64,000 nucleotides of DNA from Fimbriosthenelais zetlandica (lineage: Eukaryota): the NCBI GenBank assembly GCA_977030845.1, contig OZ365114.1, positions 20,460,001-20,524,000 of the forward strand. The letters are read 5' to 3'. The position numbers were made by a program, and so were the translations under genes. Below, piece after piece: positions 25,784 through 57,956 of this stretch; positions within the stretch are counted from its first letter, which is position 1; every line of letters begins with the position of its first letter. The notes below the pieces were generated by a model. The model was not told the origin of the DNA. It did not search any database and was given only the letters and a program-made list of their open reading frames with translations.

Positions 25784-26818
25784 ATGGTGGATGTTAACCA
25801 GATTACCTCCAGCATTGGACACGCCTATAACAATGACTACCTCATAGACGGGGTTACTTTTGGACCCCCTTTCCCTAAAGAAACAGTAAAGAAAGCAGCG
25901 AGCTTTCCCTTCACATCACAGGACATATTACTGGTTTCCTTCCCACGTTCAGGAGAGGACTTTCTATCAGATATTGTCTGGCTTTTAATGAATGAAGCTG
26001 ACACCTTTGGTGCCCGCAATATTCCGAGCACGGATCGCCTTCCTCTAATGGAACTTGAAGGAATTCACGGCTATGAGAGCCCGGTTGAATGTTTAATGGG
26101 TCGAGGCAGTCCCAGGCTGATGCGAACCCATCTTCCCTATAGCCTTATAGGGGGCGCCATTGAGAAAGGTCATCCTAAGGTCATCTGTGTGCTTCGTGAT
26201 CCAAGAGAAGTTGTCGTATCGCAGTATCGGTCCTATATGCAGTGGCCTGGACGAAATGTTCCATCATTTGATTATTTTTTCAACCAGTTTTTCAAAATGA
26301 GAAATGTTCTCTTCGGTTGTTATTTCCAGCACGTTCTTGGTTATTGGAAGAAGAGAAAGGACCCCAACTTTCTTGTAATTAAATACGAAGACCTCAGGAC
26401 GGATATTGAAGATAGTATCTTGAAAATTGCCCATTTTCTTATGATGGATCTGAAGCCTAAGCCAATGCATACGATAGTGAAGTATATGTTGAAGCACGAG
26501 GATGCACGACCAAATGGCAATGCTAGAATCCCCATGTATGTCAATGCCATCACTAAAGTGGAGACTTACAAAAGCGACTGTTACGAGACTGCCTCTGATT
26601 ATGAAAATACCTCAAAAGATGAAAACAAACCGTCGGATTCTTCAGAATCTCAAGAAGAAATGATGAAGAAAAAGAACATCATGGATTCCAATCCAGCAGC
26701 GCCCTTAGAGGTGGTGATAGTTTGTGAACCGAAACTGGTGGAAATGTCTGAAACACAGGCACGTATTGTGGATAAACTCTGCCAGTACCATCTGAAAGCC
26801 ACTGGCCTCAACTACTGA
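25784..26818 (+). CDS. Cytosolic sulfotransferase (SULT) family homologue, 344 aa, single coding exon, degenerate cofactor-binding motifs
   Basis: DILLVSFPRSG (5'-PSB-like), RLMRTHLPY (catalytic His), KVICVLRDPREVVVS (3'-PB), FGCYFQHVLGYW and FLVIKYEDL...ILKIAHFL are typical SULT segments. Confidence 0.85.
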   Translation: MVDVNQITSSIGHAYNNDYLIDGVTFGPPFPKETVKKAASFPFTSQDILLVSFPRSGEDFLSDIVWLLMNEADTFGARNIPSTDRLPLMELEGIHGYESPVECLMGRGSPRLMRTHLPYSLIGGAIEKGHPKVICVLRDPREVVVSQYRSYMQWPGRNVPSFDYFFNQFFKMRNVLFGCYFQHVLGYWKKRKDPNFLVIKYEDLRTDIEDSILKIAHFLMMDLKPKPMHTIVKYMLKHEDARPNGNARIPMYVNAITKVETYKSDCYETASDYENTSKDENKPSDSSESQEEMMKKKNIMDSNPAAPLEVVIVCEPKLVEMSETQARIVDKLCQYHLKATGLNY

Positions 26819-52318: not shown

Positions 52319-53764
52319 ATGGAGAGATGCATTCCTTCCATCTTATTCCTCTTCCTCGTCTATTTTCCAATATCTTCCGTTTCGCGTGGAGACCTGACTG
52401 GCAGGGGATCTGCTGCCAATGGAGAGGCCACATCAAGCCAGCTGCTGGTTTATAATGAAGCTAGACGGCAGGTGGTGCTACACCAGGCCACATTAGATAA
52501 ACTAGCCTCCCTCCCTGGTCCCCTCCATGTCATCACGGCCATCGGTGACGCCAGGATTGGCAAATCAACTGCCTTCAACGTCATGGCCGCCATGCTGATG
52601 AGCAAAGACAAGAAAGGCAAGATCAGTTCAGTCCCTTCACTCTTCAGCGTTTGTCAGAGCCTTGAGACTTGCACGAAAGGAGTATGGGTGCACACTTTGC
52701 CTTTACAGGAGGGAGGGCACTTAGTCATGCTAGATGTGGAGGGGACAGACCTTGGCAGAGACATGATCACAACGCAATTCAGCCTTCTTACTTCTTTGCT
52801 ATCATCTGACGTCCTTGTATTTTTGAAAGAATCCTTTCCAAAGAGGACTGGGATATTCCTCCATGAACTGGCTAGGTTGAAGGACCGACTACAGGCACAT
52901 TCAGACCAGGTGCCTTCTGACCAGGCACTTTATGTGATCATTAGAGATCCATTAAAACCACCCCAGGATGTCTCCCTCAAGACTTATGTCACCCAAGTAC
53001 TGAGTGACCCCACCATCTGTATTGATGTGGTTGATGACTCTGAGTGTAGATTACTGGGGAAACATTACCCACTGAGTCAGGTCAATGTCTACTCCATGCC
53101 TTACGTCAGTCGCAGGCATCAGAAATCTTTCGAGTGGGCCCTGAAGGACAAGACATATTTAAAAACAGTGGCATCTCTAACTTTTGAGATCAAAAACCAC
53201 ATTGATGTATCTGTTGGCACTGAAACTACAGGCATGGTCTTTGCTGGGATTGTTAGAACTTTCATACAGACGTTAGTTCAATCAGAAAGTCAAACCAACG
53301 GCCCAGCAGTGGATACGAGTGAGCAAGAACCCAATAGATGCCAAATGACCACACCTGACCCAGACCAAGAAACAGAACTGTTAGACGTTGAATCCATGTC
53401 CACGGAAGATATGGATGAGTCGTCATCGCGGGTAGATGAACCACTGAAAGTGGGATCTCTAGAAGTAGAAAAAATCATCAAATCTCCATTTGAAACAATG
53501 GGACCTGGAGTGTATAGCTTCGTAATGAACAATGTGCTGAGAATGAAACCCTCACCACAACCAAGTCAAGCTCAGGGGAAGAAGAAGTGGAACAGAGAGG
53601 AGGAGGATGATGATGAAGATTGCAGGGGTGGTGTAGGTAGTGGATGTGATAAATCAGCTAGTGGTCAGACCAGAATGACCAAATGGGGTAAAGCTATACA
53701 CGAGTTCATAGATGATATATCAGATGCTCTGGATGATTTTTTCAGCAGTGTCCTTGCTGAGTGA
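52319..53764 (+). CDS. Guanylate-binding protein/atlastin-family large GTPase domain protein with N-terminal signal peptide-like segment, 481 aa, single coding exon
   Basis: G1 GDARIGKS (with the GBP-type Arg), G2 CTKGVW, G3 LDVEG, G4 IIRD; hydrophobic N-terminus MERCIPSILFLFLVYFPISSVS; acidic C-terminal tail. Confidence 0.87.
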   Translation: MERCIPSILFLFLVYFPISSVSRGDLTGRGSAANGEATSSQLLVYNEARRQVVLHQATLDKLASLPGPLHVITAIGDARIGKSTAFNVMAAMLMSKDKKGKISSVPSLFSVCQSLETCTKGVWVHTLPLQEGGHLVMLDVEGTDLGRDMITTQFSLLTSLLSSDVLVFLKESFPKRTGIFLHELARLKDRLQAHSDQVPSDQALYVIIRDPLKPPQDVSLKTYVTQVLSDPTICIDVVDDSECRLLGKHYPLSQVNVYSMPYVSRRHQKSFEWALKDKTYLKTVASLTFEIKNHIDVSVGTETTGMVFAGIVRTFIQTLVQSESQTNGPAVDTSEQEPNRCQMTTPDPDQETELLDVESMSTEDMDESSSRVDEPLKVGSLEVEKIIKSPFETMGPGVYSFVMNNVLRMKPSPQPSQAQGKKKWNREEEDDDEDCRGGVGSGCDKSASGQTRMTKWGKAIHEFIDDISDALDDFFSSVLAE

Positions 53765-55965: not shown

Positions 55966-57956
55966 CTAAGGATTGTTGTTGGTATCGACCAGTAGATGTC
56001 TAGGGAAGCTAAGTGGGGCACTTATAACACAGTGGACATTTTCAGGATAGGGCGGCAGTTCCTCCACCTCCAATGTTACCACATTCTGTCTCTTACATCG
56101 AAAATCCTTCTCATCCTCAACAAAACTGATAAAATAGACCCAGGGTGGGTTGACTGCTGGCCGGGCCACCCCAGCCAGCGAGCCAGCCGGGGCCACTATC
56201 TTAGTCCATTCATTAGTTATTTGATTATAACATTCTATACTTTTATTACAGCGGTCTACAGCATATATATTGCCAGTGACTGATAACATAACATGGCCGG
56301 CATGAGGTAGTAACATGGGTGACTTGTCCTCCCATGTGTCTGATCCAGGATCATAGGACCACACAGTCATCACTGTTTCATCTTCAGTTCTTCCACCTGA
56401 CACATATATCTTCCCTTCATGTTCACAAGCAGATGCTGATTTCCTAGGTTGAGGTAGAGGCGCTATAGACTTCCATTCATTCTGATCTACACTATACACT
56501 TCACACTTGTCTGTGGGGGGATGGTCTATGCTCAGGTCTAAAGGACTGCCTCCTCCAAAGGCGTATAATTTTTGATTGAAGGCCACGAGTGGGAATGATT
56601 GTCTACGGGTTGCCATGCGGGCTATTCTCGTCCAGGTGCCTGTACGAGGATCAAATCTCTGACAGGTGGCCCTGGCATGTGCCGGTCTACCCATCCCACC
56701 ACACACATACAGAAAGTTATCCATCACCACCACGGCTGCGTACAGAAAGTTAGTATCCGCACTGTCCAGTTGTAACCAGCGACCGTCATGTAGAGCGAAC
56801 ACTTTATTACAGTTATGTTTATATCCAATATGAAGCCCGTAGCGGCCACCAAGGGCCACCATACATGGCTCATTCCTCACTTGTGTCCGAGCATTCTGCA
56901 TGACGGGGTGTCTACTGGGTAAGACATGGTAATGTAACGCCTCGTCCAGGAAAGCTCGACACTTGGGATCCGACATCACATAAGTTTGAGAAACCTGATC
57001 TACAAGTTCCTCTGGCTTCATCATGGCAAAACGGATGTGTTCAAAAACTTCAGACACATTAAGACTCCTCTCTGTGCGGTCGTAATCCACCCAGCGTACC
57101 ACATGGTGGAAGAGGTCCAGCTCGCACGACACATTCAACCGACTGCTCTGAAGGATGGCTCGCAGATGCTCTCGATGCATCTTCATAAACTGATCTGAGT
57201 CGACAATCTTGTCAAAGTGTTCTATCACAAAATCCAAGGCCGAGTCCTTCACTCCAACAAGGGCGAAGGTCTCGGCTATATTCAGAATATCAATACAGGT
57301 CTTGTAATGGATTTCACTGATGAGGAATTGACAGCAGAGCTGAATGGCTGAACTCATTTGGAGGTGGCAGGCTCCAGCCAGTGCCTCCATGATGTCTTCT
57401 AGGTTGAGACGGAGCCTCCCTGTGTAGGCAAAGTCCAGTAATATACTCATAGCATTGGCCGTCACACCCTTCAACTCCACATGGTCCTGCCGGGCCTCCA
57501 TCATCGAACCTGAAATTAAGAGTTCAATAGTTAATCAACATGCTGCAGCAGATCCAGACGAAATTCAACACAGATATTAGAGTTTATTTAAAATATATGA
57601 GCTGGTTTCTATCTAAATTAAAACAGAACAGAGAGTCAATGTTAGAGATAGTTTGTGGAAAATATTCATTAAAATAGTGGTCTTTAAACTAAAGTGTCAC
57701 CCTTGAGAGACAGGTACCACTTACCAGTGAGCATGGCTCTGAAGTAATCGCTGACCGCTGCCAGTACAGTCCTGTGAGTGCTGAATGACTGGCCCTCAGC
57801 AATGACTGTGTAATCACACAGTAGTTCTCCATGGTAGAGCTGGCGGAGGGTGCTGAGGATAGCACTACTGTGACCAGGCGAGGTGAGGGTACGGTGAGAT
57901 GGAGGGGTTCCCTCCGGGGTGTGGAGCCGCTTGACTGAGCCATTGTCAGAGGCCAT
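55966..57956 (-). CDS. KLHL26: BTB-BACK-Kelch protein, KLHL26-like, 591 aa, complement(join(55966..57509,57725..57956))
   Basis: BTB (HRTVLAAVSDYFRAMLTG|SMMEARQDHVELKGV), BACK (CELDLFHHVVRWV, HIRFAMM) and Kelch repeats with GG motifs; the phase-1 intron after RAMLTG is at the position I recall for KLHL26. Paralogue assignment is from recall. Confidence 0.85.

What the first reader, a model, noticed from the sequence alone, without database searches (positions are those of the whole stretch)
52319..53764. GBP/atlastin-type GTPase with an apparent secretory signal peptide and no helical stalk
Seen: all four GTPase motifs look intact, including the cis Arg of G1. The protein starts with a short n/h/c-type hydrophobic leader followed by RGDL. 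It lacks the long GBP helical domain, a CaaX box and atlastin-type C-terminal membrane hairpins, and ends in an acidic linker plus an amphipathic-looking helix (KWGKAIHEFIDDISDALDDFFSSVLAE). Established: GBPs and atlastins act on the cytosolic face of membranes in cell-autonomous immunity and ER fusion. Inference: a lumenal or extracellular dynamin-superfamily GTPase, possibly a secreted immune effector attacking microbial membranes. Alternatively the leader is an uncleaved anchor leaving the domain cytosolic.
Basis: partly seen in the sequence, partly recalled or inferred. Interest (0 to 1): 0.75.

Follow-up and report, generated by a model that had tools for sequence, protein, structure and literature searches.

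The report
Signal-peptide GBP-like GTPase in a worm
A real, conserved, intron-less gene in what is probably a marine worm encodes a GBP/atlastin-type GTPase that starts with a secretion-type leader, and it belongs to an undescribed invertebrate branch of this otherwise cytosolic enzyme family in which almost every member has such a leader.

Summary
Window 52319-53764 (+) is one 481-aa ORF with a GBP/atlastin-class large G domain (residues ~38-326). G1 with its internal Arg, the switch-I Thr, G3 (DVEG) and G4 (IIRD) are all intact. It has a short hydrophobic N-terminal leader, no GBP helical domain, no CaaX box and no second hydrophobic segment. The tail is acidic and disordered, with two conserved modules, one a C-terminal acidic amphipathic helix.

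The gene is single-copy. Two orthologues (58% and 49% identity) lie beside the same BTB-Kelch neighbour. Purifying selection acts on the G domain and both tail modules.

A profile search places it in a leader-bearing branch of GBP-like proteins. This includes coral and jellyfish "GBP-like" entries, many ending in a coiled coil plus a Peptidase_S74 self-cleaving domain. Canonical GBPs in the same hit list have no leader.

Entry into the secretory pathway is therefore the best reading (about 0.6). No signal-peptide predictor, expression data or localisation data were available. An uncleaved anchor with a cytosolic G domain remains a live rival. The "immune effector attacking membranes" idea is untested, and the strongly acidic helix argues against simple binding to anionic membranes. 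I found no paper describing such GBPs. I class it as a new variant of a known kind, interest 0.6.

The parts
52319..53764 (+). Complete single-exon coding sequence (481 codons plus stop) of the leader-bearing GBP-like GTPase
   Evidence: Orthologues P0001 and P0002 are collinear from leader to last residue.
52319..52384 (+). N-terminal leader, residues 1-22: short n-region (MER), hydrophobic core of about 14-15 residues with Pro at -6, and polar c-region SSVS with a candidate cleavage site after Ser22
   Evidence: AF2 models helix 5-15 followed by a disordered linker 17-34. Equivalent leaders occur in P0001, P0002 and the subfamily.
52430..53296 (+). GBP/atlastin-class large G domain, residues ~38-326
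   Evidence: Pfam GBP E 2.5e-4; PDB profile hits to GBP2/GBP5 at E 1e-5; AF2 plus Foldseek; dN 0.24 against dN of about 0.95 in the disordered parts.
52544..52567 (+). G1/P-loop GDARIGKS, residues 76-83, including the in-cis arginine (Arg79) that aligns with the catalytic Arg of the GBP P-loop
52661..52687 (+). Switch I, residues 115-123, with Thr119 (the only invariant column across 74 relatives), flanked by Cys112 and Cys118
52733..52744 (+). G3 DVEG, residues 139-142
52937..52948 (+). G4 IIRD, residues 207-210. The guanine-specificity Asp is kept here but replaced (RG/RS/RE) in most leader-subfamily relatives
53297..53446 (+). Fast-evolving disordered acidic linker, residues 327-376
   Evidence: pLDDT below 50; 22% identity and dN 0.94 against the orthologue.
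53447..53551 (+). Conserved tail module 1, residues 377-411 (core PFETMGPGVYS), function unknown
   Evidence: 74% identity, dN 0.20; invariant block in A1; low-confidence helices 380-393 and 396-407.
53552..53674 (+). Second disordered segment rich in Asp/Glu, residues 412-452, with conserved Cys443
53675..53761 (+). Conserved C-terminal acidic amphipathic helix, residues 453-481 (motif I-x-D-A-L-D-D-F-F)
   Evidence: AF2 helix 455-480; 69% identity, dN 0.20; hydrophobic moment 0.62-0.72, net charge -4 to -5; a similar C-terminal LDD[FI]F motif occurs only in the P0022 cluster among 210 session proteins.

Best explanation
This is a functional, single-copy, intron-less gene of an animal genome, probably a polychaete annelid. 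Its product enters the secretory pathway through a cleavable N-terminal signal peptide. Cleavage after Ser22 is inferred. The mature protein of about 459 aa is a catalytically competent GBP/atlastin-class large GTPase domain followed by an acidic, mostly disordered tail. That tail carries two conserved modules, the last a C-terminal acidic amphipathic helix. By homology (inferred, not shown), the G domain binds guanine nucleotide and hydrolyses it using the P-loop arginine in cis, probably on nucleotide-dependent head-to-head dimerisation as in GBPs and atlastins. The tail modules would dock it to a partner, or to a membrane in a pH- or Ca2+-dependent way. The site of action would be the lumen of the secretory pathway, secretory granules or the extracellular fluid. 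It is the local representative of an undescribed leader-bearing branch of GBP-like proteins. Other members of that branch (cnidarians and others) continue into a helical region with two invariant cysteines, a coiled coil, a hydrophobic stretch and a Peptidase_S74 self-cleaving trimerisation domain. This lineage has replaced all of that with the acidic tail. A humoral defence role is a guess by analogy with GBPs.
For: Real gene:
- The ORF is intact in three species beside the same convergent BTB-Kelch neighbour.
- dS is saturated. dN is 0.20-0.24 in the G domain and both tail modules, against about 0.95 in the disordered parts.
- It is single-copy in its genome.

GTPase:
- All motifs are kept, including G4 RD.
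- The fold is confidently GBP-like.

Leader as a signal peptide:
- The hydrophobic cores in the three orthologues are only about 13-15 residues, too short for a bilayer-spanning helix. Each has a basic or neutral n-region and a polar c-region.
- Of the roughly 32 full-length members of the subfamily, nearly all have an n/h/c leader. Many end in classical AxG/AxA-type sites such as AQG, TQG, ANA and AAG.
- Canonical GBPs in the same hit list have no leader and have G1 at about residue 40-47, often with a CaaX box.
- A maximum-likelihood tree puts the leader-bearing proteins together (SH-aLRT 94 for a 37-row group), with this clade inside it.
- The relatives have exactly two cysteines conserved in 29 of 30 sequences in otherwise Cys-poor proteins. 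That is the usual signature of a structural disulfide in an oxidising compartment.
- This clade conserves an even set of cysteines: 112, 118, 234, 243, about 341, and 443.
- No alternative start exists downstream of the leader and before the P-loop.
Against: - No signal-peptide or topology predictor could be run.
- No RNA or DNA sequencing run was listed, so there is no expression evidence.
- The protein has no N-glycosylation sequon.
- The charges flanking the leader are balanced (+1/+1), so the positive-inside rule does not decide orientation here.
- GTP supply in the ER lumen or outside cells is not an established condition.
- Every characterised GBP, atlastin, Sey1 and RNF112 works on the cytosolic face.
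- The tree support that joins this long-branched clade to the core of the leader subfamily is only moderate (SH-aLRT 80-94, quick search).
- The Pfam GBP score (20.7 bits) is just under the gathering cut-off of 21.1.
Confidence: 0.6

Rival explanations
1. The N-terminal hydrophobic segment is an uncleaved membrane anchor of the cytochrome-P450 or HSD17B type, with the N-terminus in the lumen or embedded. The G domain and acidic tail are then cytosolic. The protein would be an ER- or lipid-droplet-anchored GBP/atlastin-like GTPase. The C-terminal D-D-F-F-S-S-V stretch (D-F-F-E-S-V in one orthologue) might act as an FFAT-like or other cytosolic partner-binding motif.
For: - All characterised members of the GBP/atlastin class act on the cytosolic face, where GTP is abundant (established knowledge).
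- The flanking charges of this protein's leader are balanced.
- Several relatives have basic clusters just after the leader, for example P0005, P0006, P0011 and P0015.
- Many relatives also have a C-terminal hydrophobic segment. Together with an N-terminal anchor this would give an atlastin- or mitofusin-like layout anchored at both ends.
- There is no sequon.
- The resemblance of the C-terminus to a (phospho-)FFAT core is my own reading of the sequence, not a test.
Against: - The hydrophobic cores in the three orthologues are about 13-15 residues and interrupted by Pro, Gln or Ser, which is short for a stable transmembrane anchor.
- P0001 has a basic n-region and an acidic stretch after the core, which predicts N-in/C-out.
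- Many relatives have canonical small -3/-1 cleavage motifs.
- The invariant Cys pair in relatives suggests an oxidising compartment.
Confidence: 0.27
2. The protein enters the secretory pathway but no longer works as a GTPase there. The G domain would be a nucleotide-independent or differently liganded scaffold (pseudo-GTPase), used for oligomerisation or ligand binding.
For: - GTP availability in exoplasmic compartments is doubtful (general knowledge).
- Most leader-subfamily relatives have lost the guanine-specificity Asp of G4, showing RG/RS/RE/IG instead of RD. This suggests relaxed or altered nucleotide use in the branch.
Against: - This clade keeps every catalytic element, including RD, the P-loop Arg, Lys-Ser, the switch-I Thr and DVEG. 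All are invariant in three species that are only 49-58% identical overall.
- That pattern is what selection for nucleotide binding and hydrolysis would give.
Confidence: 0.1
3. The ORF is not a working gene: either a decaying retrocopy or an ORF whose real start and exon structure differ, so that the leader is an artefact.
For: - It is intron-less.
- No RNA run was listed.
- It is absent next to the BTB-Kelch orthologue in more distant annelid contigs.
Against: - The ORF is full-length and collinear in three species with conserved synteny.
- The pattern of constraint is strongly domain-specific.
- The leader is conserved in position.
- No other in-frame start precedes the P-loop.
- The whole subfamily is intron-less yet annotated or transcribed elsewhere: RefSeq XP_067040439.1, EukProt models, and mRNA-sized contigs.
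Confidence: 0.03

Closest known systems
Interferon-inducible guanylate-binding proteins (human GBP1/2/5 large GTPase domain; Pfam PF02263)
   Same: - Best sequence and structure matches.
- Same P-loop with internal catalytic Arg, same switch-I Thr, D-x-E-G, and RD in G4.
   Different: - About 17-20% identity only.
- N-terminal hydrophobic leader.
- No GBP_C helical middle/effector domain and no CaaX box.
- Acidic disordered tail instead.
- Intron-less. The same genome also holds ordinary multi-exon GBP-type genes on other chromosomes.
Leader-bearing GBP-like proteins of cnidarians, e.g. 'guanylate-binding protein 5-like' XP_067040439.1 of Acropora muricata (P0009 cluster) and EukProt Seg1023.2/.3 models
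   Same: - Nearest sequence relatives outside the three orthologues (E 1e-38 to 1e-10).
- Shared leader, shared QLL-x-Y strand before the G domain, shared GDAR-x-GKST P-loop.
- Intron-less genes.
- Grouped together in the tree.
   Different: - Only 20-25% identity, on a long branch.
- Relatives carry a helical region with two invariant Cys, a Glu/Lys/Arg-rich coiled coil, a Gly-rich hydrophobic stretch and often a Peptidase_S74 domain. This protein has none of these.
- Most relatives have lost the G4 Asp, which this protein keeps.
Atlastins / Sey1 / RHD3 and RNF112
   Same: Same G-domain class; Foldseek E 1e-13 to 1e-10.
   Different: - No three-helix bundle and no C-terminal transmembrane hairpin.
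- No RING domain.
- The only hydrophobic segment is N-terminal.
OPA1/Mgm1 (from my own knowledge, not tested here)
   Same: A precedent for a dynamin-superfamily GTPase whose G domain works outside the cytosol, brought there by an N-terminal targeting signal plus a hydrophobic segment.
   Different: - Different branch of the superfamily.
- Mitochondrial intermembrane space, not the secretory pathway.
- Long stalk and paddle domains.
C-terminal amphipathic granule-sorting helices of carboxypeptidase E and prohormone convertases, and acidic granins (from my own knowledge; functional analogy only)
   Same: A secretory-pathway protein ending in an acidic disordered stretch and an amphipathic helix rich in Asp/Glu. 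Such a helix could bind membranes or aggregate at low pH and high Ca2+.
   Different: No sequence relationship was found. A feature search with the tail alone gave only chance-level scores.

Membership tests
GB1/RHD3-type (GBP/atlastin-class) large G domain, dynamin superfamily | P-loop G-x4-G-K-S/T carrying an internal Arg at the GBP catalytic position | tested here: met
   GDARIGKS, residues 76-83; Arg79 aligns with the Arg of GLYRTGKS in GBP2/GBP5.
GB1/RHD3-type (GBP/atlastin-class) large G domain, dynamin superfamily | Switch-I Thr, and G3 D-x-E-G | tested here: met
   Thr119 is the only invariant column in 74 relatives. DVEG at 139-142.
GB1/RHD3-type (GBP/atlastin-class) large G domain, dynamin superfamily | G4 of the GBP type, (T/V)(L/V)RD | tested here: met
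   IIRD at 207-210, aligned with LRD of canonical GBPs in alignment A2.
GB1/RHD3-type (GBP/atlastin-class) large G domain, dynamin superfamily | Fold of the large GTPase domain | tested here: met
   AF2 pLDDT about 85-95 over residues 40-326. Foldseek to the GBP1 LG domain 2b92_B: E 2e-14, TM 0.76 by target.
GB1/RHD3-type (GBP/atlastin-class) large G domain, dynamin superfamily | Pfam PF02263 gathering threshold | tested here: not met
   20.7 bits against a cut-off of 21.1, E 2.5e-4. This is a marginal miss. Orthologue P0002 and 66 of 74 relatives carry the Pfam hit.
Canonical GBP (GBP1-7 type) | C-terminal helical domain (PF02841 GBP_C) | tested here: not met
   No Pfam hit. Residues 327-453 are modelled as mostly disordered.
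Canonical GBP (GBP1-7 type) | Cytosolic protein without an N-terminal leader; CaaX box in the membrane-targeted members | tested here: not met
   Leader at residues 1-22; the protein ends VLAE.
Atlastin/Sey1 | Helical bundle followed by two C-terminal transmembrane segments | tested here: not met
   No hydrophobic segment outside residues 1-22; no bundle in the model.
Leader-bearing GBP-like subfamily (unnamed; coral/jellyfish 'GBP-like' entries) | N-terminal n/h/c leader, QLL-x-Y strand and GDAR-x-GKST P-loop | tested here: met
Leader-bearing GBP-like subfamily (unnamed; coral/jellyfish 'GBP-like' entries) | Placement inside the group in a tree of G domains | tested here: inconclusive
   The clade sits inside a 37-row leader-dominated group (SH-aLRT 94; 80 for the node joining it to the core). 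It lies on a branch of length 1.16, and the tree came from a quick search only.
Leader-bearing GBP-like subfamily (unnamed; coral/jellyfish 'GBP-like' entries) | Post-G helical region with two invariant Cys, a coiled coil, and often Peptidase_S74 | tested here: not met
   These are absent here. Only one Cys (about residue 341) aligns, and the alignment there is doubtful.
Secreted protein with a cleavable signal peptide | Positive prediction by a trained predictor, or experimental cleavage or translocation | not testable with these tools
   Only rule-based inspection was possible: h-core of about 14-15 residues, Pro at -6, Ser at -3 and -1.

The most novel reading that the evidence does not exclude
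A whole branch of GBP-type GTPases, including this worm gene, works on the exoplasmic side, in the secretory-pathway lumen, secretory granules or body fluid. These would be the first dynamin-superfamily enzymes known to do so. In that reading this protein is a soluble, nucleotide-driven humoral effector or granule protein, and its acidic C-terminal helix provides pH- or Ca2+-switched docking.
Probability: 0.45. Interest if true: 0.8.

Novelty: new variant of a known kind. Interest (0 to 1): 0.6.

Why it matters
Every studied GBP, atlastin, Sey1 and RNF112 acts on the cytosolic face of membranes. A conserved branch with secretion-type leaders would mean one of two things. Either a large GTPase operates where GTP supply is not obvious, or a new N-terminally anchored architecture exists for membrane-acting GTPases. 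Either way this protein is a compact test case. It is soluble apart from its leader and intron-less. All of its catalytic residues are intact. It can be cloned directly from genomic DNA to ask where such proteins go and whether they hydrolyse GTP there. It also draws attention to the unstudied fusion of a GBP domain with a Peptidase_S74 domain in cnidarians.

Tried and rejected
- Sequencing runs for DNA or RNA of the locus: none was listed. There is therefore no expression or transcript-structure evidence, and read laying was not used.
- Word-indexed homologue search with the subfamily profile: it added nothing.
- Orthologues next to the BTB-Kelch gene in three further annelid-like contigs (L003, L004, L005): tblastn found none. 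L003 holds only 3.5 kb downstream, so absence there is weak evidence.
- Homodimer prediction of the G domain with GTP: the tool was busy four times, then returned 'no answer', score 0.00. This is no evidence either way.
- Feature search with the tail alone: chance-level scores.
- N-glycosylation sequon counts as a topology indicator: no difference between leader-bearing and canonical GBPs, so dropped.
- RGD as an integrin motif: not conserved in the orthologues, so rejected.
- Poly(A) signal count downstream: not above chance.
- Literature searches for signal-peptide GBPs, GBP plus Peptidase_S74, coral or annelid GBPs: nothing relevant. A 2022 review says invertebrate GBPs are largely uncharacterised (PMC9005921).
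Full report
**What is there.**
Window 52319-53764 (+) is a single open reading frame of 481 codons. The ATG sits in a strong context, with A at -3 and G at +4. Only 19 open codons precede it. The next in-frame Met is residue 89, beyond the P-loop. The leader therefore cannot be skipped without destroying the GTPase. An acceptor-like sequence lies about 95 nt upstream here and about 120 nt upstream in the orthologous locus L001. That would fit a 5'-UTR intron with the whole coding region in one exon, but it is only suggestive. The window has about 40% G+C and no N.

**The G domain.**
- Pfam gives a marginal GBP hit: E 2.5e-4, 20.7 bits against a cut-off of 21.1.
- Searches against solved structures find GBP5, GBP2 and GBP1, at E 1e-4 with the single sequence and 1e-5 with the three-orthologue profile.
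- AlphaFold2 run on a 37-sequence alignment models residues 40-326 with pLDDT mostly 85-95.
- Foldseek matches this model to GBP5, the GBP1 large GTPase domain (TM 0.76 normalised by the target), RNF112, GBP2 and atlastin-1 at E 1e-15 to 1e-11. The AlphaFold DB and ESM Atlas libraries give concordant hits.
- All nucleotide-binding elements are present and invariant in the three orthologues: GDARIGKS at 76-83, with Arg79 at the position of the GBP catalytic arginine; the switch-I Thr119; DVEG at 139-142; IIRD at 207-210.

**What is missing.**
There is no GBP_C domain, no CaaX box and no second hydrophobic segment. Residues 327-382 and 392-453 are modelled as disordered.

**It is a real gene under selection.**
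- Two orthologues, P0001 (58% identity) and P0002 (49%), exist in other assemblies. Each is followed by a convergent BTB-BACK-Kelch gene, just as here at 55966-57504 (-).
- The Kelch neighbours are 81% and 79% identical to the one in the window, so the GTPase evolves faster than its neighbour.
- Against L001, synonymous sites are saturated.
- dN is 0.24 in the G domain, 0.20 in a tail module (residues 377-411) and 0.20 in the C-terminal helix (453-481). It is about 0.95 in the two disordered stretches and 1.15 in the linker after the leader.
- The gene is single-copy in its 447-Mb genome.
- That genome also holds ordinary multi-exon GBP-type genes on three other contigs, including a tandem cluster.

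**Host.**
The best named relative of the neighbouring Kelch gene is from the polychaete Paralvinella palmiformis (58%). Siboglinid and mollusc proteins follow at about 32%. The host is therefore probably a polychaete annelid. This is an inference.

**The wider family.**
A profile of the three orthologues, scored against 1.84 billion representative proteins, found 162 hits, 45 of them at E 1e-10 or better.
- The strong hits form a coherent group of proteins of about 470-600 aa. In these, G1 sits at residue 60-78 behind a hydrophobic N-terminal leader.
- The weaker hits are canonical GBPs with G1 at about 40-47, no leader and frequent CaaX ends.
- Thirteen of the strong hits end in Pfam Peptidase_S74, the self-cleaving trimerisation domain of phage tailspikes and MYRF. 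It is preceded by a Glu/Lys/Arg-rich coiled coil and a Gly-rich hydrophobic stretch.
- Two metagenome contigs show the same architecture. One carries two tandem copies next to a Wnt gene fragment, so it comes from an animal.
- Named members are 'guanylate-binding protein 5-like' of the coral Acropora muricata (XP_067040439.1) and EukProt gene models.
- Full-length proteins called from megabase genomic contigs imply that the branch is generally intron-less.
- In a maximum-likelihood tree of G domains, the three orthologues form a fully supported clade on a long branch. That clade lies inside a 37-row group dominated by leader-bearing proteins (SH-aLRT 94; 80 at the joining node; quick search).
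- The rows without a detected leader in that group are N-terminally truncated fragments or fell just below my threshold.
- Most members of the branch have replaced the G4 Asp (RG, RS, RE). This clade keeps RD.

**Signal peptide or anchor?**
No trained predictor was available, so this rests on rules and comparison.

In favour of a cleavable signal peptide:
- In the three orthologues the hydrophobic core is about 13-15 residues, interrupted by Pro, Gln or Ser. That is short for a bilayer-spanning helix.
- Here Pro lies at -6 and Ser at -3 and -1 of a candidate site after Ser22.
- P0001 has a basic n-region and an acidic stretch after the core.
- Across the branch many leaders end in textbook small-residue sites such as AQG, TQG, ANA, AAG and SVA.
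- The relatives have exactly two cysteines conserved in 29 of 30 sequences, in otherwise Cys-poor proteins. That is typical of a structural disulfide in an oxidising compartment.
- This clade conserves six cysteines.

Against, or neutral:
- The flanking charges of this leader are balanced.
- There is no glycosylation sequon.
- Some relatives have basic clusters after the leader.
- All characterised relatives of this G domain work in the cytosol.

I put entry into the secretory pathway with a lumenal or extracellular G domain at about 0.6-0.7. I put an uncleaved anchor with a cytosolic domain at about 0.25-0.3.

**The tail.**
After the G domain comes an acidic region (34 Asp/Glu against 16 Lys/Arg). 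It contains two conserved islands.
- The first is residues 377-411, with core PFETMGPGVYS.
- The second is the last 29 residues, a predicted helix with hydrophobic moment 0.62-0.72 and net charge -4 to -5.
- A similar C-terminal LDD[FI]F ending occurs in only one other cluster of the branch (P0022) among the 210 proteins seen.
- Two readings remain, both from my own knowledge and untested. If the protein is lumenal, the helix could be a pH- or Ca2+-switched docking or granule-sorting element like those of carboxypeptidase E and the prohormone convertases. If it is cytosolic, it could be a partner-binding, FFAT-like motif.
- Secretory granules are also one exoplasmic compartment known to import nucleotides, which would ease the GTP-supply objection. 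This too is from my own knowledge.

**Mechanism I commit to.**
- Shown: a constrained GBP-class G domain with a full catalytic set, a conserved leader, and two conserved tail modules.
- Inferred: the leader is cleaved, and the mature protein is soluble in the secretory pathway or outside the cell. It binds and hydrolyses guanine nucleotide using Arg79 in cis, probably on dimerisation. The tail docks it to a partner or membrane.
- A dimer prediction gave no verdict.
- A defence role is only an analogy.

**Novelty.**
Full-text searches found no paper on GBP-like proteins with signal peptides or with Peptidase_S74 domains. A 2022 review states that invertebrate GBPs are barely characterised (PMC9005921). 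Work on Nematostella GBPs concerns canonical-type homologues (PMC8713801). The scan's own notes hold nothing else on this. I class the finding as a new variant of a known kind. It is a known G domain in a new targeting context and a new architecture, and it points to an unstudied invertebrate branch.

Noticed in passing
window 55966-57504 (-): Single-ORF BTB-BACK-Kelch gene (512 aa; Pfam BTB_KLHL33, BACK, Kelch repeats), convergent with the GTPase gene. The pairing is conserved in both orthologous loci. Its best named relative is from the polychaete Paralvinella palmiformis (58%).
   Followed up: partly
window 25784-26818 (+): 344-aa single ORF with a Sulfotransfer_1 domain (E 1e-40).
   Followed up: no
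L006:626-2359 (-) and L006:3380-5104 (+); L008:414-2096 (+): Intron-less genes for leader + GBP-like G domain + coiled coil + Gly-rich hydrophobic stretch + Peptidase_S74. Two copies lie side by side next to a Wnt fragment at L006:7006-7479. This GBP-S74 fusion appears undescribed. Its topology, and whether the S74 domain releases a trimeric GBP head, are open questions.
   Followed up: partly
G000:C19:35337632-35356865, G000:C13:10713874-11088958, G000:C11:28544333-28549376: The same genome carries ordinary multi-exon GBP/atlastin-type genes, including a tandem cluster of about three on C19. They match Pfam GBP far better than the window's gene does.
   Followed up: no
alignment A2, G4 column (window residues 207-210): Most leader-bearing relatives have replaced the guanine-specificity Asp of G4 (RG, RS, RE, IG), whereas the window's clade and canonical GBPs keep RD. 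This may point to altered nucleotide use in that branch.
   Followed up: partly
P0022 C-terminus versus window 53675-53761: A distant leader-bearing relative without S74 also ends in an Asp-rich run followed by I-G-E-M-L-D-D-I-F-D-F, resembling the window protein's I-S-D-A-L-D-D-F-F. This could be shared ancestry or convergence.
   Followed up: partly
L003 (7.7-kb contig whose Kelch gene is 91% identical to the window's): The 3.5 kb downstream of the Kelch gene shows no trace of the GTPase gene, although in the window the two stop codons are only 2.2 kb apart. The cause could be a longer spacer, a rearrangement or a loss in that close relative.
   Followed up: no
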